Of a stretch of 64,000 nucleotides of DNA, positions 1-60,980 are shown in pieces. The stretch spans positions 111,352,001 through 111,416,000 of the forward strand of contig NC_042998.1 in assembly GCF_006345805.1 (NCBI RefSeq). Reading direction: 5' to 3'. The position numbers and the translations under genes are program-made. The notes beneath the pieces were generated by a model. It did not search any database and was not told the DNA's origin. It was given only the letters and a program-made list of their open reading frames with translations. The number at the start of each line of letters is the position of its first letter. The first letter of the stretch is position 1. The stretch is from Octopus sinensis. Lineage: Eukaryota.

Positions 1-80
1 ATGTATGCATGTTAATATTGCCAATTTATGTTTGTATGTACGTTTGTATGTATTTAGGTATGTAGGTAGATAGGAGGGAA

Positions 81-1050
81 GGCAGCGAGCTGGCAGAAAC
101 GTTAGCACGCCGGGCGAAAAGCTTAGCAGTATTTTGTCTGCCGCTACGTTCTGAGTTCAAATTCCGCCAAGGTCGACTTTGCCTTTCATCCTTTCGGGGT
201 CGATTAAATAAGTACCAGTTACGCACTGGGTTTGATATAATCGACTTAATCCATTTGTCTATCCTTGTTTGTCCCTTCTGTGTTTAGCCACTTATGGGTA
301 GTAAAGAAATAGATATTTCGTCTGCCGCTACGTTCTCAGTTCAAATTCCGCCGAGGTCGACTTTGCCTTTCATCCTTTCGGGGTTGATAAATAAGGTACC
401 AGTTACGCACTGGAGTCGGTGTAATCGACTTAATCTATTTGTCTGTCCTTGTTTGTCCCCTCTGTGTTTAACCCCTTGTGGGTAATAAAGAAATAGGTAT
501 TTCGTCTGCCGTTACGTTCTAAGTTCAAATTCTGCCGTGGTCGACTTTGCCTTTCATCCTTTCGGGGTCGATTAAATAAGTACCAGTTACGCACTGGGTT
601 TGATATAATCGACTTAATCCATTTGTCTGTTCTTGTTTGTCCCCTCTATGTTTAACCCCTTGTGGGTAATAAAGAAATAGGTATTTCGTCTGCCGTTACG
701 TTCTAAGTTCAAATTCCGCCGATGTCGACTTTGCCTTTCATCCTTTCGGGGTTGATAAATAAGGTACCAGTTACGCACTGGAGTCGGTGTAATCGACTTA
801 ATCCATTTGTCTGTCCTTGTTTGTCCCCTCTATGTTTAACCCCTTGTGGGTAATAAAGAAATAGGTATTTCGTCTGCCGTTACGTTCTAAGTTCAAACTC
901 TGCCGAGGTCGACTTTGCCTTTCATCCTTTCGGGGTCGATTAAATAAGTACAAGCTATGCACTGGAGTCGGTGTAATCGACTTAATCCCTTTGCCTGTCT
1001 TTGTTTGTCCCCTCTATGTTTAGCCTCTTGTGAGCAATAAAAAAAATAGG
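81..1050 (+). mobile_element. tRNA-derived SINE (family 1): head followed by 5 tandem 184-bp body+tail-B units
   Basis: Head GGCAGCGAGCTGGCAGAAACGTTAGC (A-box-like) at 81 and B-box-like GAGTTCAAATTCC in each unit. Units start at 130, 314, 498, 682 and 866 (184-bp period). Confidence 0.9.
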
Positions 1051-1225
1051 TAGGTAGGTAGGTAGGTTGGTAGGTAGGAAGGTAGGTAGGTTGGTATGTA
1101 GGTAGGTAGGTTTGTAGGTAGGTAGGTAGGTAGGTTTGTAGGTAGGTAGGTAGGTATGTAGGTAGGTAGGTAGGTAGGTAGGTAGGTAGGTAGGTAGGTA
1201 GGTAGGTAGGTTGGTAGGTAGGTAA
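1047..1225. repeat. (TAGG)n microsatellite directly following the SINE array
   Basis: Direct reading of the sequence. Confidence 0.95.
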
Positions 1226-25514: not shown

Positions 25515-25900
25515 AGGGTGGCGAGCTGGCAGAAACGTTAGCACGCCGAGCGAAATGCTAAGCAGTATTTCGTCTGTCGCTACATTCTCAGTTCAAATTC
25601 CGCCGAGATCGACTTAGCCTTTTATCCTTTCGAGGTCGATTAAATAAGTACCAATTACGCTCTGTTGTCGATATAATCGACTTATTCCGTTTGTCTGTCC
25701 TTGTTTGTCCTCTCTGTGTGTAGCCCTTGTGGACAGTAAAGAAATAAGAATCGTTAGTACTCCGGGGAAAATGCTTAGCGGTATTTCGTCCATCTTTACG
25801 TTCTGAGTTGAAATTCCGCTGAGGCCGACTTTACCTTTCATCTTTTCAAAGTCGATAAGATAATAACCAGTGAAGAAAAGGAGTCGATGTAATCGACTTA
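25515..25900 (+). mobile_element. SINE family 1 dimer (head-body-tail B, re-entry at the A box, second body)
   Basis: GGCGAGCTGGCAGAAACGTTAGC..CCCTTGTGGACAGTAAAGAAATAAG|AATCGTTAGTAC..TTCTGAGTTGAAATTCC. Confidence 0.85.
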
Positions 25901-26221
25901 TGCTCTCTTCGGAAATGATCGGAAGAACAAAACTATGAAAACTCAAGTTTAAAATTCGACATTACTTTGTCATCTACATTGCAACGAAGAAGCTTTGTAT
26001 CGTTTTCGAAAGACGCTTATAGTGATGTCAGGGTTGTCATTTTATAGTGGTAATGTCGATTAAATGACACACTATAATTTAATGAATATGAGAGACAGAT
26101 GGGTCACTATCTTGTGCCTAACAACAAGTAAATAGAAATTCCCGAGACGTTTGTAATAAGTCAAATCATATTTATTACTGGAGGTAATGCGTTAACATAT
26201 AAGGTTAATTGAAGGAAAGCT

Positions 26222-28710: not shown

Positions 28711-29859
28711 TGATGTAATGGAACCAACATATACTAATACTGTTGCTTACTTTTCATGTGTATCGTAAACATCAAGCATTGAAGCCTATTTTTTTTTCTT
28801 TTGCATTGTCTGGCTTTTTTTTTTGTCAGAGATGAAACTGTATAGTAAATTCTGATTTTGTATTTATTATTATTGCTACTGTTGTTATCGGTTTCTGTGC
28901 TGTATTGGTTGTTATTGCTGCTGTTGCTGGTGCTGGTGCTGATCTGTTTCTTGTTCTTAGTGTTGTGGTGATTGTTACAATTGCTTTTTGAATATAATAT
29001 TGCAAAAGTATACAATACCATATATATATATATATATATATATACACTGTATGCTGAACATAATGAACAGTTACAGAATTATAGAAAATACTGTAATAAC
29101 ATTATAAAACATTAATATATTTTTTAGACAATTATGTGTAAAACTTGATATTTCTGGTAGTGCTGTTGCAGCTGCTCTTCGTGTTATCTTTGCTTTGCTA
29201 AGGTAATTGTTGTTGTTGCTAGTGTTCATGTGGTTGTTATTTTTGCAGGAGCTCTTGTGGCTCTTATTATCGCTGTTGATGTTACTGTAATTAGTATTGT
29301 TGTTGTACATATTGCTGTCACTGACGCTGTGCTGGGTTGTTACCGTTGTCGGTATCATTGATATCGTTCTTACTGTTCCTCATTCTTGCTGGTGTTGCTA
29401 ACGTTGTTAGTGTTGAAGATGCTGCCGTTGATATCATTTTGGTGGTGTGATATTGTCGTAATCATTGCGTTTGCTTATGTTGTTATAGTTGAATTTGTTA
29501 GTGTTATTATTGTTGTTGTTGCAATTTTTGTCAGTTCGTGTTTGTAATCGAATGTTTATTCTTATTGCTGTCATTTATTCTATTTTATATCGCGCTAGCG
29601 ATTCTTCGCCTTCGCTACTGTTGCGTTAATTGTAGTGATAGCGTTAGTTCGTGGAGTTGAAGTGGTTTCAGAAAGTGTTGGTGATGATAGCTGGAGGACG
29701 GCCCTACTGCTGCCACTACTACGAGTGATAATTATAATTTTTTTTTTATTCATGTTAGCTCATCCCCTCTGAATCATTTCAACTCAGAATGTATAGCTGG
29801 AAGAATTTCGGCGTGCTAATGATTCTGCCAGCTTGCCGCCTTACTAAGAGTGAAAACAA

Positions 29860-30043
29860 TTCTTTTTACTATGGGCACAAAGCCTGAAATTTGTGGGGAG
29901 AGACACTAAGTCGGATTATATCGACACCAGTGCTCAACTGGTTCTTGTTTTATGGAAAGGAGGAAATACAAAGTCAACTTCGGCGGAATTTGAACTCAGA
30001 ACGTAAAGACGGACGAAAAAATGATTCTGCCAGCTCACCGCTT
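29860..30043 (-). mobile_element. SINE family 1 monomer with tail A, internally deleted
   Basis: Reverse complement of the head, B box and GGCTTTGTGCCCATAGTAAA tail. A separate head fragment lies at 29790-29842. Confidence 0.75.
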
Positions 30044-30059
30044 TACAACGAGTGATAAT

Positions 30060-30487
30060 AGTTTCAAATTTTGACAGAAGGCCAATCATTTCGAGGTAGG
30101 GAGAAAGTCAATTACATCGACTCCATTGCTTCACTGGTAGTTATTTTATCGACCCCGAAAAAATGTAAAGTAAGTCGACCTTAGCAGAATTTGAACTCTG
30201 AACGTAAAAATTGGCAAAAAGTCGCTAAGCATTTTGCCTGGGGTACTAACGATTGTTATTTCTTTACTCCTCACAAGGGGCTACACACAGAGGGGACAAA
30301 CAAGGACAGACAAACGGATTAAGTCGATTACATCGACCCCAGTGCGTAAATGGTACTTATTTAATCGACCCCGAAAGGATGAAAGGCAAAGTTGACCTCG
30401 GCGGAATTTGAACTCAACGTAACGGCAGACGAAATACCGCTAGGCATTTCGCCCAGCGTGCTAACGTTTCTGCCAGCTTGCCGCCGT
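30060..30487 (-). mobile_element. SINE family 1 dimer (tail-B unit plus tail-A unit)
   Basis: Two body copies separated by tail B at about 30255-30320. Confidence 0.85.
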
Positions 30488-31129: not shown

Positions 31130-31510
31130 ACTAAAAGCGCAAGGCCTGACATTTTGAGGGGAGGCACTAGTTTATTGCATCGACTGCTTGACTGGTACTT
31201 ATTTTATCTACCCCGAAAGGATAAAAAGGCAATATCGACCTCGGCGGAATTTGAACTAAGAACGTAAAGACGAGCGAAATACCTATTTCTTTACTACCCA
31301 CAAGGGACTAAACACAGAGAGGACAAACAAGGACACACAAACGGAATAAGTTGATTATATTGACCCCAGTGCGTAACTGATACTTATTTAAACGACCCTG
31401 AAGGGATGAAAGGCAAAGTCGACCTCGGCGGAATTTGAACTCGGAACGTAGCGGCGGACGAAATACCACAAAGCATTTAGTCCAGCATGCTTATCATTCT
31501 GCCAGGCAAA
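31130..31510 (-). mobile_element. SINE family 1 dimer (tail-B unit plus tail-A unit)
   Basis: Same architecture; junction AAAGAAATAGGTATTTCG on the minus strand. Confidence 0.85.
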
Positions 31511-35011: not shown

Positions 35012-35230
35012 AAAGCGGCGAGCTGCAGAAACGTTAGCATGGCGGGCGAAATGCTTAGCAGTATTTCGTCGGTCTTTACATTCTGAGTTCAAATTCCGCT
35101 GAGGTCGACTTTGCCTTTCATCCTTTCGAGATCGATAAATTAAGTACCAGTTGCGTTATGAGGTCGATCTAATCGACTGCCACCTCCCCAAAACTTTTGG
35201 GCCTTGTGCCTAAAGTAGAAAGGATTATAC
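35012..35230 (+). mobile_element. SINE family 1 monomer with tail A
   Basis: GCGGCGAGCTGCAGAAACGTTAGC..GAGTTCAAATTCC..GGGCCTTGTGCCTAAAGTAGAAAGGATTAT. Confidence 0.85.
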
Positions 35231-42804: not shown

Positions 42805-43040
42805 AAAGACAAATAAACACACCCCACCTGGTAGCACTGCCAAGCCAAGAGCATCTGGAAATTATCCATGATAGTTCCCGACTGGAAAGTCCTACGGAAT
42901 AAACTAGCCAGTTCGTTCTCGTCGGTCCCCAGAGTTTCCCCGAGAACGTAGTCGCACTTCCTCGCCACTAATCCTCTATAAATTTCTAAAGCAGAACATT
43001 CCGATCCCATTGCCCAACTTGTAGAGGGTTGAGAGCGCCT
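42805..43040 (-). mobile_element. Tx1-like LINE ORF2 fragment (region just upstream of the C-terminal zinc finger)
   Basis: IYRGLVARKCDYVLGETLGTDENELASLFRRTFQSGTIMDNFQMLLAWQCY. Confidence 0.6.
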
Positions 43041-43060
43041 GACGACATTTTAGCTGCCCA

Positions 43061-43679: not shown

Positions 43680-43685
43680 GTTATT

Positions 43686-44023
43686 ATTTCTTTTATTAGC
43701 CACAGGGCCTTACATAAAACAACGTAAAATGACATGACACAACATAAAAGACAACACAAGACGAGACAAAGGGTTTTCATCGTGTAAACAATGTATATAA
43801 CAATAAAAAAATTAAACTAAAGAGAACTCCCAAAAGAGGAGGCGCTTTAAAGGTCCTCGTGGGAAAAAAACCCACAAAAGCCACGAGCGCCTGATCAATA
43901 GGGCAAGAGCCCGTCTCTTTTAATTTTTCATAGGTGTATTCTCAGAATTCGTCCTTTCACACCGGTCATTCTTCGCTCCACCCTCAACTATCTCTTCAAA
44001 CGAAACTTGAAAAGTTGATGAGG

Positions 44024-44365: not shown

Positions 44366-45726
44366 TCGTTATCTGATCAATTACTGAAACATGTCAGCTC
44401 GACAGAAAAATAAGAAAACTGTTGACAATGCATAGAATGCACCACCCTAAGGCAGATACAGAACGACTTTATCTGCCAAGAAAAGAGGGAGGCCGTGGTC
44501 TTTTGCAACTGGCAATAACAATGAAGATTGCTACAATTGGCCTAGACACCTACCTGAGAAAGTCTGAGGACTGCATGTTAAAACTTGTCTCAAAACCTGA
44601 AAACAAGAAAGCATCATACTCAGTAACAAAATAGGCAAAGGAATATCTAAGTGAATTCCGAATACAACAAATTTCGGAATTAGAGATAGACATACAAGAA
44701 ACAAGCACAGAAAAAGCTAGGCGCATGAAAACCCGTGCCAAAATTGCGGCCTTAGATATTCTGAAAAATAAATGGCAAGAAAAACCTCTCTATGGCAAAT
44801 ACCCAAAGAGAGCGAATAATGCAGATATTGACAAAGCCCTGACCCATCAATGGCTAATGGCCTCTGGCTTAAAATATGAAACAGAAGGGTTTATCATAGC
44901 AGCTCAAGATCAATGCCTACCAACAAGAAAGTACCAGGCCAACATATTAAAGAACGGCAGTAGCCCAACATGTCGTGTATGCCGACAACAAAATGAAACC
45001 ATTGATCATGTTGTCTCCAAATGCAGTCTTCTAGCGCCTACAGAGTACCTCAATAGGCATGATAGAGCTGCACAATATATTCACTGGGTAATTTGCAAAA
45101 ACCTGGATTTGCCCCATGAAAAAAACTGGTGGGAACACAATCCACCTCCAGTGCTTGAAAATGACCACATCTCACTCCTCTGGAACTTCACCATTCAAAC
45201 TGACAGAAAGATAGATGCAAATAGGCCAGACATCATATTGAAAGACTTCAGACAAAGAACATGCCTCCTCATTGATATGACTGTCCCAATCGATATAAAC
45301 GTATCTGTCAAGACCTGCCAAAAACTGAGCAAATATAAAGATCTTGAAATAGAAATCAGCAAAATGTGGAACCTGAAGACTAAAACAATACCTGTTGTCA
45401 TAGGTGCCCTGGGAATGATAGCGAAAGGGGCTAATTGCTACCTAACTCAGATACCAGGAAACCACAAAATGGCAGAAATTCAAAAGATAGTGCTCATGGG
45501 AACCGCTCATATCCTACGCAAAATACTCTCTATGTAATCTCAAGATTTAAAACAAACTTTTTTTTTAAATTTAATTTATGTATTAGACATTCACTAGTAC
45601 AACACAAAAAAAATATATGGCACACTAGGCATAACAACAACGTGAATTTCCAACCTGTTGTCTCTTGAGGTCTCTGGGTGAGACTTGGAGCCAACTTGTA
45701 CAGACATAAAGCAAAAGTCAAACATA

Positions 45727-48500: not shown

Positions 48501-48864
48501 AAAAAATATCTTCTGGCACAGTCATTGCACGATAACAACATTGATTAAGCTTCGTGCAATGGCCATACTCGATAACGAGGGGGCAGCCACCATATATATG
48601 TGTGTGTGTATATATATATATATATATAATATATATACACCAAACCAGCAGATTGCAAAATTTTGTGGTATTATTTATTCACCATTACACATGTTCCATT
48701 TGCTAATACTATTTGTTTATCTGTCTGAAGAATTTCTAACAGGAGTTATTTTACATGTTTCTTTTGCATGTAGTAAACGAACCATGTGTAATGGCGAATA
48801 AATAATACCACAAATTTTCCTAATCCCTTGTTTTAATATATAATTATTCTGCAGAAAATATTCA

Positions 48865-49035
48865 TTTCTACTCTAGGCACAAGGCCTTGAAAAGTTTTGG
48901 GGAACGGGGATAGTCGATTCTAGGATAAAAGGCAAAGTCGACCTCGGCGTAATTTGAACTCGGAATGTAGCGGCAGACGAAATACTGCTAAACATTTAGC
49001 CGGCGTGTTAACGATTCAACCAGCTCACTGCCTTC
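48865..49035 (-). mobile_element. SINE family 1 with tail A, internally deleted
   Basis: CTAGGCACAAGGCC..AAAGGCAAAGTCGACCTCGGCG..GAACTC..CAGCTCACTGCC on the plus strand. Confidence 0.8.
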
Positions 49036-51720: not shown

Positions 51721-51891
51721 ATTATAAGTTATGCGAGAGGCATTTACTCAATACTCGCTCTGTGGCCCATGCAGCTACATTGCATCATAGCTGTGTTGTT
51801 TGCTTGCATTCCAGAACTTTCTTTTAAGACCTTAGAGATCATGCAGTTGAGGAGCTTCAATAATTCCATGTTACGATATATATGGCTGTGT

Positions 51892-51957
<66 letters not shown>

Positions 51958-52115
51958 GACACTTATGTATGTATGTATGTATGTATGTCGATAGGTAGGT
52001 AGGTAGGTAGGTAGATAGGTAGGTAGGGGGTAGGTATGCTGGCACACAGACAGATAGCCAGACAGACAGACAGATAGACAGACATATAGACAGACAGATA
52101 GATAGATAGATAGAT

Positions 52116-53035
<920 letters not shown>

Positions 53036-53201
53036 GATATTTATGTATGTATGTATGTCGATAGGTAGGTAGGTAGGTAGGTAGGTAGGTAGGTAGGTAG
53101 GTAGGAGGTAGGTATGCTGATACACAGACAGATAGCCAGACAGACAGACAGACAGATAGACAGACAGACAGATAGACAGACAGATAGACAGACAGACAGA
53201 T

Positions 53202-53298
<97 letters not shown>

Positions 53299-54236
53299 TG
53301 ATAGATAGATAGATAGATAAACATTTATGTATGCATGCATATTCTTGTATGTATGTCACAACTTGTGACCTGTCGGCTTGCTCTAAAATATTACATCTCC
53401 TCAAAAGGTTTTCAGTAGTATATCATGCTATTTAAATTAAACAAAATGTTACACATTTTGCATTGGAAGTAGCGGACAAAGTCGATGAGAGCTATCTGCG
53501 TAGGTGATATAAAAAAAGAAAGAGTCATCCTATTCCGGATCTGAACTCAGCACATAACAAAATGTCACGAGTTCTCGTACGACGCTCTATCGGCTTTTGT
53601 CATTAAGATAAAACATTTTATAATCTATATTTACACAGTTTTTTTTATAATTATAAATAGGTTTCAATATGCGAAGAACTGAAGTTTTATAGATAAATGC
53701 AAGGGCTCCGTGTGAAATAAGGAGCTGAACACGAAAACAGAACATTTTCCTTTCAAAAAAAAATGTTGAAACGTTGTTAAGAAGAAAATAAATGTTCAAA
53801 CAATTCAACATTAATTCTACATGCTAAATCTCAGGAAAAACCATAATAATAATTATTATCCACAAACTTTCAAAATCATAATCGTTATTATTTTACACAA
53901 CATTGAATATATTCACATTAACAAATCATGCATGATAGAGCCACATCTGTTGTTATTGTCGTTTATCATGTTTTTTTGTTGTTTTTTTCGTGTTTTTTTT
54001 CTTCTTTAATTTTGTTGTGTTAAAAACTATTTAAAATAATATGAAAATTTTAAAAGCATTTCTATTATAAAAGTTGCATAATTTATATTAAATTGACTAA
54101 CTTTTCTACAAAGGTTTTAAGCGCTAGTTGCGAAATTTATTCTGAAATATAACCTGTTAGAAATGTTTTAGAGACAAAAATGTAAAAAAAAAACACACAT
54201 ACACACATTCATACCCACACGAATATATGCACAAGC

Positions 54237-58928: not shown

Positions 58929-59008
<80 letters not shown>

Positions 59009-59025
59009 CAGATAGATAGATAGAC

Positions 59026-59081
<56 letters not shown>

Positions 59082-59082
<1 letters not shown>

Positions 59083-59398
59083 TGTTTCTTTAGTAGCCAC
59101 ACAGGGCTGCACACAGACAGAACAAATTACAAGGTAGAGCTTTTCTTTTGGGGGTAAAAAAAAGGGGGTTGGTTTTCGATCAAAAGGGATCGTAAAAGGA
59201 AAGAAAGAGGACAAAAAAAGGGGAGGATTTAAAAAAAAGGAGGGGAGAGGGAAAAAAAAGAAAAGGGGAGAGTAAAAAAAAAATTGATCAATAGGGATCG
59301 TAATCACAGAAATGTCAATATGAAGTGTAAAGGGGAGGACAGGTGAGGTTTACCCGTGGAAGGAAAAGCCTACGGAAAAGACCACGGTAACCTCGGTC
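59082..59398 (-). mobile_element. Tx1-like 3' UTR copy within (GATA)n
   Basis: Homologous to about 52116-52400. Confidence 0.9.
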
Positions 59399-59457
<59 letters not shown>

Positions 59458-59474
59458 CAGATAGATAGATAGAC

Positions 59475-59558
<84 letters not shown>

Positions 59559-59559
<1 letters not shown>

Positions 59560-59875
59560 TGTTTCTTTAGTAGCCACACAGGGCTGCACACAGACAGAAC
59601 AAATTACAAGGTAGAGCTTTTCTTTTGGGGGTAAAAAAAAGGGGGTTGGTTTTCGATCAAAAGGGATCGTAAAAGGAAAGAAAGAGGACAAAAAAAGGGG
59701 AGGATTTAAAAAAAAGGAGGGGAGAGGGAAAAAAAAGAAAAGGGGAGAGTAAAAAAAAAATTGATCAATAGGGATCGTAATCACAGAAATGTCAATATGA
59801 AGTGTAAAGGGGAGGACAGGTGAGGTTTACCCGTGGAAGGAAAAGCCTACGGAAAAGACCACGGTAACCTCGGTC

Positions 59876-59876
<1 letters not shown>
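59559..59876 (-). mobile_element. Tx1-like 3' UTR copy within (GATA)n, near-identical to 59082-59398
   Basis: 477-bp offset and the same truncation point. Confidence 0.9.
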
Positions 59877-59958
<82 letters not shown>

Positions 59959-60374
59959 TGGTTGCTATTTATTGCAAGTCAAGTGGTTGTGTTGAATTTC
60001 CTTCGCCCTCCGTTACTATCTCTGAAATTAGATGACTATAAAATATTGAACCAATCCATGTCACTTTAGGACATGTTTTTAATGATTATCTTTGTGTTTG
60101 CTTCATTTTCATTTATTTTGTTTCATTGTTTGTGTAAATCTGAAAAATGCATGAAAGCTGTTCTTAGAAAGTGAGAACCTAAACGTTTAATTTAGAATTA
60201 TTTGTTTAATTGTTGTTATTTATTTGTTACCGATTACTGTTATACATCTAAAATATTAGTATTGATGGTTTGGTTGAGTAAACATTGCGTATTATTTTAT
60301 TAAAAGCTTGATGTTTCCCAACATCGAAAATAGTGCTCTGAACCTGCTAACCTATTGAATATATTTCAGCGGAA

Positions 60375-60980
60375 GGCGGCGAGCTGGCAGAAACGTTAAG
60401 CACGCCGGACGATATGCGGTAGCCGTATTTCGTCTGCCGTTACATTCTGAGTTCAAATTCCGCCGAGGTCGACTTTGCCTTTCACCCTTTCGGGGTCGAT
60501 AAATAAGTACCAGTTACGCACTGGGGTCGATATAACCGACTTAATCCGTTTGTCCTCTCTGTGTTTAGCCCCTTGTGGGTAGTAAAGAAATAGGTATTTC
60601 GTCTGCCGTTACGTTCTGAGTTCAAATTCCGCCGAGCTTGACTTTGCCTTTCATCATTTCGAGGTCGATAAATTAAGTACCAGTTACGCACCGGGGTCGA
60701 TGTAATCGATTTAATCTCGTTGTCTGTCCTTGCTTGTCCCCTCTATGTTTTGCCCCCTTGTGGGCAATTGAGAAATAAGAAACGTTAGCGGACGAAATGC
60801 TTAGCTGTATTTCGTCCGTCATTACGTTCTGAGTTCAAATTCCGCCGAGGTCGACTTTGCCTTTCATCCTTTCGGAGTCACTAAATTAAGTCCCATTTGC
60901 GTACTGGTGTCGATTTAATCAACTGCCCCACCCCAAAAAAACATTTTGGATCTTGTGCCTAGAGTAGACAAGAATATATT
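60375..60980 (+). mobile_element. SINE family 1 trimer (two tail-B units plus one tail-A unit)
   Basis: Head at 60375, re-entries at about 60594 (TATTTCGTC) and about 60778 (AGAAACGTTAGC), tail A at about 60920-60980. Confidence 0.9.

What the first reader, a model, noticed from the sequence alone, without database searches (positions are those of the whole stretch)
440..497. SINE family-1 tail B is homologous to the Tx1-like LINE 3' terminus
Seen: tail B CCTTG---TTTGTCCCCTCTGTGT(T/G)TA(A/G)CCCCTTGTGGGTAATAAAGAAA aligns to the Tx1-like end CCTTGTAATTTGTTCTATCTGTGTGCAGCCCTGTGTGGCTAATAAAGAAA (minus strand, 52116-52168) at 38-40 of 47 positions by hand alignment, ending at the same AATAAAGAAA. 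Established: SINEs are mobilised by the LINE whose 3' end they share. Inference: this SINE acquired a Tx1-type tail, an uncommon partner class, and then became a dimer or multimer whose last unit carries a different tail A. The composite architecture recurs at 25.5, 30.1, 31.1 and 60.4 kb.
Basis: partly seen in the sequence, partly recalled or inferred. Interest (0 to 1): 0.75.

Follow-up and report, generated by a model that had tools for sequence, protein, structure and literature searches.

The report
Octopod SINE tail copied from LINE
A short mobile element in this octopus-like genome ends in a roughly 50-base tail that matches the 3' end of an L1/Tx1-type LINE, and other cephalopod sequences show the same pairing, so this is an ordinary kind of SINE-LINE partnership with an unusual partner class.

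Summary
Tail B (440-497 and nine other copies) matches the 3' end of the LINE fragment at 52116-52168(-) at 33/42 ungapped, or 38/47 with one gap. Both stop at AATAAAGAAA. The local alignment score lies 8-11 sd above dinucleotide shuffles (0/5000).

- The LINE is a 5'-truncated L1-superfamily element. Relatives carry an APE endonuclease, RT and a CCHC zinc finger. 'Tx1' is likely but rests on published mollusc classifications, not on a phylogeny here.
- The same tail closes the 3' UTR of four diverged cephalopod LINE lineages. One is a full-length Argonauta hians copy with a 15-bp TSD.
- In Argonauta, 10 SINE copies within 22 kb end in this tail next to unique DNA, and four have TSDs. The tail does terminate independent insertions.
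- The closest LINE tail to the window's tail B (31/34) belongs to a sister lineage (locus L015), not to the LINE in the window.
- In the window, tail B is terminal only at the 61-1050 array, which grew by local tandem duplication inside a (TAGG)n repeat. Elsewhere it is internal, upstream of units that end in tail A.

Verdict: a new member of a known kind, of moderate interest.

The parts
440..497 (+). Tail B of array unit 2, the copy named in the finding
   Evidence: 33/42 ungapped and 38/47 gapped identity to the LINE end. z is about 10 against shuffles.
61..1050 (+). SINE-B array. One unit has the full head (61-312). Four further 184-bp units start at head position ~69, and each ends in tail B (256-312, 440-497, 624-681, 808-865, 992-1050).
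   Evidence: TRF reports period 184, 5.0 copies, 91% matches. Units 2 and 4 are 96.7% identical and units 1 and 3 are 92.3%, which indicates duplication of a two-unit block.
1047..1224 (+). (TAGG)n microsatellite directly after the last tail B. TAGG-like repeats also lie 5' of the array (about 40-60).
   Evidence: The string TAGGTATGTAGGTAG occurs on both sides of the array.
25521..25930 (+). Composite SINE. Unit B (tail B 25692-25746) joins at AAAGAAATA|AGAATCGTTAG to an A-type unit that lacks its first ~12 nt.
30080..30485 (-). Composite SINE. Unit B (tail B 30257-30312) has the same junction type to an A-type unit. Two further SINEs follow downstream (29765-30043).
31130..31505 (-). Composite SINE. 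Unit B (tail B 31282-31339) joins at AAAGAAATAGG|TATTTCG to a partial unit that ends in tail A.
60371..60972 (+). Composite SINE of units B, B and A (tails B at 60548-60594 and 60721-60777). The whole is flanked by a 13-bp TSD, GAATATATTTCAG.
35012..35226 (+). Monomeric SINE with tail A and an 11-bp TSD, ATTATACAGTA. It serves as the reference for tail A.
48861..49035 (-). Internally deleted SINE with tail A and a 12-bp TSD, AATATTTTCTGC
52116..52905 (-). 5'-truncated LINE. It holds the last 142 codons of ORF2 (52475-52903, CCHC zinc finger), a 359-nt 3' UTR (52116-52474) and the tail (52116-52168).
   Evidence: Weak zf-RVT Pfam hit. It is 73% identical to P0003, which aligns end to end with the C-terminus of the 1153-aa APE+RT+zf-RVT protein P0155. 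It is 59% identical to the Argonauta LINE protein P0234.
52905..53319 (-). (TCTA)n-based composite microsatellite 5' of the LINE fragment. A ~220-bp copy of the same composite block lies 3' of it (51871-52115).
59082..59400 (-). LINE 3' UTR fragment ending in the tail, embedded in (TCTA)n. It is one copy of a 477-bp tandem duplication.
59559..59877 (-). Second copy of the same duplicated LINE 3' fragment
   Evidence: period 477, 98% matches
43683..43760 (-). Another LINE-type tail, ...GTAAGGCCCTGTGGCTAATAAAAGAAA, followed by (TAA)n. No ORF is attached.
42828..43056 (-). Separate coding fragment of the same LINE family (P0003 residues 128-203)

Best explanation
Tail B is the 3' tail module of an octopod SINE family. 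It descends from the conserved 3' end of a group of cephalopod L1-superfamily (most likely Tx1-clade) LINEs.

These LINEs end in a roughly 50-60-nt block: ...TTTGT..TCTRTGT, then a short hairpin, then AATAAAGAAA, followed by a few bases or a tetranucleotide repeat. SINE RNAs that carry the same block are inferred to be picked up in trans by the LINE's ORF2 protein and copied into the genome by target-primed reverse transcription. This is the 'stringent' type of SINE/LINE partnership.

The LINE copies in this window are relatives of the donor, not the donor itself. A sister lineage carries a tail nearly identical to tail B.

In this genome B units occur in three contexts.
(a) A locally duplicated array sits inside a (TAGG)n microsatellite.
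(b) B units are fused upstream of other SINE units at two recurrent junctions. Tail B always stops at ...AAAGAAATA, and the last unit carries tail A.
(c) At least one such composite (60.4 kb) is enclosed by a single TSD.

Shown: the homology, its position at the element ends, the LINE architecture, and terminal use with TSDs in Argonauta. Inferred: trans-mobilisation by the LINE protein, the LINE-to-SINE direction of transfer, and template switching as the origin of the composites.
For: 1. Tail B against the window LINE end gives z = 7.7-11.1 with 0/5000 shuffles. Within the window the LINE end otherwise hits only tail-B copies, apart from two short hits of about 21-23 nt.
2. The LINE belongs to the L1 superfamily.
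   - The 142-aa C-terminus is 73% identical to P0003.
   - P0003 aligns with the last 367 residues of the 1153-aa protein P0155, which has Exo_endo_phos, RVT_1 and zf-RVT.
   - Relative P0103 hits human L1 ORF2p at 2e-73, against 3e-25 for R2.
3. Argonauta hians locus L008 holds a 5767-bp LINE with a 15-bp TSD. It has an ORF1 with a weak CCHC knuckle, an ORF2 with APE, RT and zf-RVT, and a 3' UTR ending ...TTCTGTGTCGGCCCTTGTGGCTAATAAAGAAATCTA. Its tail matches the window LINE tail at z = 11.
4. The bodies of the UTRs no longer align between Argonauta and the window (z about 0). Only the tail is conserved.
5. LINE contigs L015 and L013/L014 carry the same tail about 110 and 190 nt after their ORF2 stops. 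The L015 tail matches tail B at 31/34, z = 10.7, including the terminal AAATAG.
6. In L008, 10 SINE copies of at least two families end in the tail next to unique DNA. Four have TSDs of 10-13 bp. SINE and LINE tails there share 50-54 of 61-64 aligned columns, z = 14-16.
7. The Argonauta B-type SINE is homologous to the window's B unit from the B-box-like motif through the tail.
8. In the window, tail B ends at the same nucleotide in three different downstream contexts.
9. The hairpin is 84.6% paired, and its third pair is G-C, C-G or A-U in different lineages.
Against: - Tail B is terminal at only 1 of 5 loci in the window, and no TSD can be read there because it sits in a microsatellite.
- The terminal repeats differ in the window: (TAGG)n after the SINE and (TCTA)n after the LINE.
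- Identity to the in-window LINE is only 79-83%.
- The Tx1 assignment has no phylogeny behind it. No hit carried a 'TX1' name.
- RNAalifold predicts no consensus hairpin. In the counted alignment, all seven double-change cells come from one lineage.
- No genome-wide data for the window's own species could be reached.
- ARAGORN and Rfam do not recognise the SINE head as a tRNA.
Confidence: 0.8

Rival explanations
1. The LINE family seen in the window (52 and 59 kb, with a (TCTA)n end) is itself the donor and mobiliser of tail B.
For: It is the only LINE with this tail in the window, and the similarity is significant. Both the LINE and the terminal SINE-B array lie inside tetranucleotide microsatellites.
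Against: The L015 LINE tail matches tail B much better: 31/34 against 33/42. It shares the CCC/GGG stem version and the terminal AAATAG, whereas the window LINE has GCC/GGC and ends CATA(TCTA)n.
Confidence: 0.12
2. In this genome tail B is now only an internal linker. B units spread as passengers of composites mobilised through tail A, and by local tandem duplication. The LINE similarity is then a fossil with no present function.
For: Tail B is followed by another SINE unit at 4 of 5 loci. The 60.4-kb composite has a single TSD around all three units. The array shows higher-order tandem duplication.
Against: B units from five loci are 82-94% identical and form a coherent family, while the downstream A-type units are heterogeneous at 64-83%. 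One locus has tail B terminal in a microsatellite. In Argonauta the same tail is terminal in 10 of 10 copies. This rival concerns present activity, not origin, and it is compatible with the best explanation.
Confidence: 0.3
3. The transfer ran the other way. A LINE captured the 3' end of a pre-existing SINE.
For: Sequence similarity alone does not give direction, and several SINE families carry the tail.
Against: The tail closes the UTR of four LINE lineages whose ORF2 C-termini are only 45-74% identical. The rest of the UTR has diverged beyond recognition. This fits an ancestral, constrained LINE feature. The SINE families that share the tail have unrelated heads.
Confidence: 0.06
4. The last ~300 nt before the (TCTA)n at 52.1 and 59 kb is a separate non-autonomous repeat. 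It merely abuts a poly(A)-ended LINE, so no LINE tail is involved.
For: An A18 run lies 35 nt after the stop codon. The 59-kb copies begin 22 nt after that run.
Against: In Argonauta, L013/L014 and L015 the same tail follows the ORF2 stop by 110-270 nt with no poly(A) run. The 52-kb fragment has (TCTA)n at its 5' end and after the tail but none at the A run, as expected for a single 5'-truncated insertion.
Confidence: 0.04
5. The similarity is due to chance or low complexity.
For: The region is T/C-rich and short.
Against: 0/5000 dinucleotide shuffles reach the observed score. The match is reproduced in three other LINE sources and in a second genus.
Confidence: 0.01

Closest known systems
Stringent-type SINE/LINE pairs that share a 3' tail (for example eel UnaSINE1/UnaL2 and tobacco TS/RTE; the survey of 58 pairs in PMC3747384 and PMC3472496)
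   Same: The SINE 3' end is homologous to the extreme 3' end of a LINE UTR. The shared region holds a small stem-loop and runs to the terminus. Short terminal repeats follow it. Several SINE families share one tail.
   Different: Known pairs come mainly from the CR1, L2 and RTE clades. In that survey L1-clade pairs appear only in maize/sorghum and Chlamydomonas, and Tx1 is mentioned nowhere in the table. Here the partner is an animal L1-superfamily LINE. Mobilisation has not been tested.
SINEU and Tx1-Mar in crocodilians (Kojima 2015, PMC4494074)
   Same: A SINE is thought to be mobilised by a Tx1-clade LINE.
   Different: The SINEU link rests on a shared target preference. SINEU elements end in poly(A), and no LINE sharing their 3' terminus was found. 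Here the link is a shared 3' sequence.
Microsatellite-specific Tx1-clade LINEs Kibi, in (TC)n, and Koshi (Kojima and Fujiwara 2004, as cited in PMC4494074)
   Same: The window's two independent LINE insertions lie inside (TCTA)n, with the repeat on both sides. Two other (TCTA)n loci in the window are empty.
   Different: The full-length Argonauta copy lies in ordinary AT-rich DNA with a 15-bp TSD. Strict site specificity is therefore not shown. The pattern may instead reflect priming by the element's own (UCUA)n end.
Tandem SINE arrays and mosaic tails of bivalve HCD SINEs (PMC11481361)
   Same: A first unit with a complete head is followed by head-truncated repeats. One body type combines with different LINE-derived tails.
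   Different: The bivalve partners reported there come from at least four LINE clades, of which Nimb and CR1-Zenon are the ones named in the passages I read. Here composites join units with two different tails.

Membership tests
SINE/LINE pair with a shared 3' tail (stringent type) | The SINE 3' end is significantly similar to the LINE 3' end | tested here: met
   window; L015; Argonauta. z ranges from 7.7 to 16, and no shuffle reaches the observed score.
SINE/LINE pair with a shared 3' tail (stringent type) | The similarity runs to the very 3' terminus, with the same terminal bases or repeat | tested here: inconclusive
   Both end at AATAAAGAAA. In Argonauta both continue with TCTA. Tail B and L015 both continue with TAG. 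In the window, however, the SINE is followed by (TAGG)n and the LINE by CATA(TCTA)n.
SINE/LINE pair with a shared 3' tail (stringent type) | Independent SINE insertions end in that tail and carry TSDs | tested here: met
   Met in Argonauta L008: 10 terminal copies, four with TSDs of 10-13 bp. In the window only the 61-1050 array ends in tail B, and it sits in a microsatellite where no TSD can be read.
SINE/LINE pair with a shared 3' tail (stringent type) | A pol III (tRNA-type) head on the SINE | tested here: inconclusive
   A B-box-like motif, GAGTTCAAATTCC, is visible. ARAGORN and Rfam find no tRNA.
SINE/LINE pair with a shared 3' tail (stringent type) | A conserved stem-loop in the tail | tested here: inconclusive
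   The named 4-bp helix is 84.6% paired (0/500 shuffles). Its third pair is GC, CG or AU in different lineages. RNAalifold predicts nothing, and single-sequence z-scores are weak.
SINE/LINE pair with a shared 3' tail (stringent type) | Tail-dependent mobilisation by the LINE protein | not testable with these tools
   This needs a retrotransposition assay.
Tx1 clade of LINEs | ORF2 with an N-terminal APE endonuclease, RT and a C-terminal CCHC zinc finger | tested here: met
   Met in relatives (P0103, P0128, P0155) and in the Argonauta element. The window copy keeps only the CCHC C-terminus. The L1 clade shares this architecture.
Tx1 clade of LINEs | RT phylogeny places the element with Tx1 references rather than L1 proper | not tested
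   No Tx1 reference sequence was reachable and no hit was named TX1. Indirect support: published annotations list the L1-type LINEs of octopus and other molluscs as L1-Tx1 or Tx1.
Tx1 clade of LINEs | Target-specific insertion (true of many members, not all) | tested here: inconclusive
   Both independent window copies lie in (TCTA)n. The Argonauta copy does not.
L1 clade proper (relaxed, poly(A)-dependent) | A 3' poly(A) end with no specific tail shared with SINEs | tested here: not met
   The elements end in AATAAAGAAA plus (TCTA)n, TCTA or TAG, and SINEs share the tail.
L1 clade proper (relaxed, poly(A)-dependent) | ORF1 of the Transposase_22 (L1 ORF1p) type | tested here: not met
   The Argonauta ORF1 gives only a weak zf-CCHC hit and no Transposase_22 hit.
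Deu / Nin-DC SINE superfamily | A conserved central domain | not tested
   No reference sequence was available. This is a lead from memory, plus the published statement that octopus SINEs are mostly classed tRNA-Core or tRNA-Deu.
SINE-derived tandem array | Head-to-tail copies of a SINE unit with a regular period | tested here: met
   TRF reports period 184 and 5.0 copies. The identity pattern shows a two-unit higher order.

The most novel reading that the evidence does not exclude
Octopods may carry a group of L1/Tx1-type LINEs that recognise a specific hairpin-containing 3' tail, unlike the poly(A)-driven L1 of mammals. This one tail may have been adopted by several unrelated SINE families. 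If so, these LINEs would be drivers of part of the very large octopus SINE load, and an animal example of 'stringent' recognition within the L1 superfamily.
Probability: 0.35. Interest if true: 0.6.

Novelty: new member of a known kind. Interest (0 to 1): 0.4.

Why it matters
SINEs make up more than a tenth of octopus genomes, and most families are listed as unclassified (PMC13282606). In the paper library I searched, no partner LINE has been reported for them.

A sequence-specific tail shared with an L1/Tx1-type LINE would name a driver for at least one SINE group. It would also add an animal case to the question of whether stringent 3'-end recognition is ancestral in the L1 superfamily, a question raised from plant and algal examples (PMC3472496).

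The mechanism itself, tail sharing, is textbook. The value is in annotation and in the partner class, not in a new principle.

Tried and rejected
- Homologues of the 142-aa LINE C-terminus: the word-indexed search gave only two short fragments.
- Source names to settle Tx1 against L1: none of the hits to P0029 or P0128 carried a clade name. The supplement of Kojima 2015 is not held.
- A metagenome scan with a degenerate pattern covering both tails returned three stretches. I read one, a chance match in non-cephalopod sequence. The other two gave only short 24-nt matches.
- Look-up of the window ORF 44725-45537: not on record.
- Contigs L001, L005-L007, L011 and L012 match only coding sequence and stop before any tail.
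- The L001 UTR against the window UTR is not significant. The window UTR body against the Argonauta UTR body is not significant either.
- ARAGORN and Rfam find no tRNA in the SINE head.
- RNAalifold on 23 tails predicts no consensus structure.
- I suspected that tails A and B are related, because both carry CCTTGTG..TA...AGAAA. The similarity is not significant (z = 0.9-2.2), so I dropped it as a claim.
- No LINE with a tail-A-like end occurs in the window.

Full report
**What is at the coordinates.**
Positions 61-1050 hold a SINE with a tRNA-like head (61-~130) followed by five 184-bp units. Each unit ends in the same ~57-nt 'tail B'...TTTGTCTGTCCTTGTTTGTCCCCTCTGTGTTTARCCCCTTGTGGGTAATAAAGAAATAG. 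The copy at 440-497 is the tail of unit 2. Ten tail-B copies occur in the window.

The purported LINE end at 52116-52168(-) reads CCTTGTAATTTGTTCTATCTGTGTGCAGCCCTGTGTGGCTAATAAAGAAA, followed by CATA(TCTA)n.

**Is the similarity more than chance?**
- blastn aligns 42 nt without gaps at 33/42 for the 440 copy and 35/42 for the 25.7-kb copy.
- Local alignment scores of 23-28 compare with dinucleotide-shuffle means of 8-9.6 (sd 1.6-1.9). No shuffle out of 5000 reaches them.
- Used as a blastn query against the whole 64 kb, the LINE end finds only its own three copies, tail-B copies and two short hits of about 21-23 nt, one of them at a microsatellite edge.
- Both sequences end at AATAAAGAAA, at the boundary of their elements.

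**What the LINE is.**
The piece at 52116-52905(-) is 5'-truncated. It holds the last 142 codons of an ORF with a CCHC motif (weak zf-RVT hit), a 359-nt UTR and the tail.

- The exhaustive profile search found P0003, 73% identical.
- P0003 aligns end to end with the last 367 residues of P0155. That protein has 1153 aa and carries Exo_endo_phos, RVT_1 and zf-RVT.
- Relative P0103 matches human L1 ORF2p at 2e-73 over endonuclease and RT, against 3e-25 for R2.
- All named relatives are cephalopod: Acanthosepion pharaonis and Argonauta hians.

This is therefore an L1-superfamily LINE. I could not separate Tx1 from L1 proper, because no reference or 'TX1' name was reachable. Indirect support for Tx1 comes from three sources.
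- Published octopus and mollusc annotations list L1-Tx1 or Tx1 as the L1-type group (PMC13282606, PMC8967140, PMC10294476).
- The Argonauta ORF1 has a CCHC knuckle and no L1-type ORF1 domain.
- The elements do not end in poly(A).

The two copies at 59.08-59.88 kb are one insertion doubled by a 477-bp tandem duplication. Both independent insertions lie inside (TCTA)n, with the repeat on both sides. Two other (TCTA)n loci, at 5.6 and 49.5 kb, are empty.

**Evidence from outside the window.**
No sequence of the window's own species could be reached. Relatives were informative.

*Argonauta hians locus L008 (22 kb).* It was fetched through P0234, which is 59% identical to the window's ORF.
- It holds a 5767-bp LINE flanked by a 15-bp TSD.
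- The element has an ORF1, and an ORF2 with APE, RT and zf-RVT that is interrupted by one in-frame stop.
- Its 3' UTR ends ...TTCTGTGTCGGCCCTTGTGGCTAATAAAGAAATCTA.
- This tail matches the window LINE tail at z = 11. The UTR bodies no longer align. That is the pattern expected if only the terminal ~50 nt is under constraint.

*Two further LINE lineages from Logan assemblies.* They show the same motif at the end of their UTRs.
- L013/L014: ...GGACCCTGTGTGGTCAATAAAAGAAAT.
- L015: ...ATGTTTTACCCCTTATGGGAAATAAAGAAATAG.

The L015 tail is the best match to the window's tail B. It shares 31/34 positions (z = 10.7), the CCC/GGG version of the stem and the terminal AAATAG. The tail is thus an ancestral feature of this LINE group. 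The LINE in the window is a cousin of the probable donor.

These results also dispose of one rival reading, that the last 300 nt at 52.1 kb is a separate repeat abutting a poly(A)-ended LINE.

**Does the tail terminate independent SINE insertions?**
In L008 the motif occurs 12 times. Two are the LINE. Ten close SINE-like elements of at least two families, and each is followed by TCTAT-like bases and then unrelated DNA. Four have TSDs of 10-13 bp around elements of 203-262 bp.

SINE and LINE tails there share 50-54 of 61-64 aligned columns (z = 14-16). The larger Argonauta family is homologous to the window's B unit from the B-box-like motif through the tail, although the heads differ.

**What the window itself shows.**
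Tail B always stops at ...AAAGAAATA, but three different sequences follow it.
- (TAGG)n follows at 1050.
- GGTATTTCG, head position ~69, follows at the array junctions and at 31285 and 60594.
- AGAAWCGTTAG, head position ~13, follows at 25746, 30257 and 60777.

A fixed end with variable continuations marks a true module boundary.

B units from the five loci are 82-94% identical. The downstream A-type units are only 64-83% identical to one another. The 60.4-kb composite (B-B-A) has one 13-bp TSD around all three units, and tail-A monomers have TSDs of 11-12 bp.

The array at 61-1050 has a two-unit higher order: units 2 and 4 are 96.7% identical and units 1 and 3 are 92.3%. It is bracketed by TAGG-type repeats. 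It therefore grew by local duplication inside a microsatellite.

Whether the composites arose by template switching during reverse transcription, or by insertion of B elements into resident SINEs, cannot be decided here. The Argonauta LINE carries an internal second UTR copy inside one TSD, which shows that such switching occurs in this system.

**Hairpin.**
All the tails can form a 4-bp stem with a 4-6-nt loop just before TAATAAAGAAA.
- Window LINE: AGCC/GGCT.
- Argonauta LINE and SINE: GGCC/GGCT.
- Argonauta short SINE: GGCC/GGCC.
- L013: GACC/GGTC.
- L015: ACCC/GGGA (three C-G pairs; the outermost A-A does not pair).
- Window tail B: (A/G)CCC/GGGT.

The third pair is G-C, A-U or C-G in different lineages. 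On a MAFFT alignment of 23 tails the helix is 84.6% paired, with 0/500 shuffles reaching this. All seven double-change cells come from one lineage, and RNAalifold predicts nothing. I treat the hairpin as plausible but not established.

**Comparison with what is known.**
Tail sharing between SINEs and LINEs is textbook. Surveys list about 58 pairs, mostly CR1 and RTE, with L1-clade cases only in maize/sorghum and Chlamydomonas (PMC3747384, PMC3472496).

The one reported Tx1-driven SINE group, crocodilian SINEU, is linked to Tx1-Mar by target preference. SINEU elements end in poly(A), and no LINE sharing their 3' terminus was found (PMC4494074).

I found no paper that reports a partner LINE for an octopus SINE. 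Repbase and Dfam entries could not be checked. Tandem SINE arrays and mosaic tails are known in bivalves (PMC11481361).

**Verdict.**
- The partner class is L1-superfamily and probably Tx1.
- The direct donor is a sister lineage, not the LINE in the window.
- The array is a local duplication.

This is a new member of a known kind. It is of moderate interest because of the partner class and because of the size of the octopus SINE load.

Noticed in passing
window 51871-53319: A ~220-bp composite microsatellite block lies on both sides of the LINE fragment. Its order is (TCTG)n, GGCTATCTGTCTGTGT..CAGCATACC, (TACC)n, (ATAC)n, (TCTA)n. This could be a long target duplication or an unequal crossover with a period of about 1.1 kb, which is above TRF's period limit.
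   Followed up: partly
window 58929-59958: A 477-bp tandem duplication (2.2 copies, 98% matches). Its unit is a LINE 3' fragment plus (TCTA)n.
   Followed up: yes
window 44725-45537 (+): A 270-aa ORF that looks like the C-terminal part of another retroelement protein. It has a weak zf-RVT hit and a CX2C...HX4C motif. It is unrelated to the LINE studied here, and this exact product is not on record.
   Followed up: partly
window 43683-43760 (-) and 42828-43056 (-): A further LINE-type tail (...GGCCCTGTGGCTAATAAAAGAAA, followed by (TAA)n) and a separate coding fragment of the same LINE family lie about 0.6 kb apart. Their order is wrong for a single element.
   Followed up: partly
window 35204-35226, 48861-48885, 60950-60972: Tail A ends ...GGCCTTGTGCCTARAGTAGAAA. 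It can form a GGC/GCC hairpin with the same CTTGT loop as tail B. The sequence similarity to tail B and to the LINE is not significant (z = 0.9-2.2). No LINE with this end occurs in the window.
   Followed up: partly
window 29765-30043 (-): Two more SINE units sit directly after the 30.4-kb composite. Together they are flanked by the repeat ATTATCACTCGT(T/A)GTA, so SINEs have inserted next to or into each other here.
   Followed up: no
L008 12014-12652: The Argonauta LINE carries two copies of its 3' UTR, separated by a ~135-nt insert, all inside one 15-bp TSD. This suggests template switching during reverse transcription.
   Followed up: partly
L009/L010 (ENA contig ctg122906l): Full-length copies of the related P0155 LINE lie in tandem, 6596 bp apart.
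   Followed up: no
L008 1944-2075, 5126-5390, 13887-14010, 14236-14330 (-): A second, shorter Argonauta SINE family has a different tRNA-like head and the block ...CCATTTATCTG.CC. It uses the same LINE tail.
   Followed up: partly
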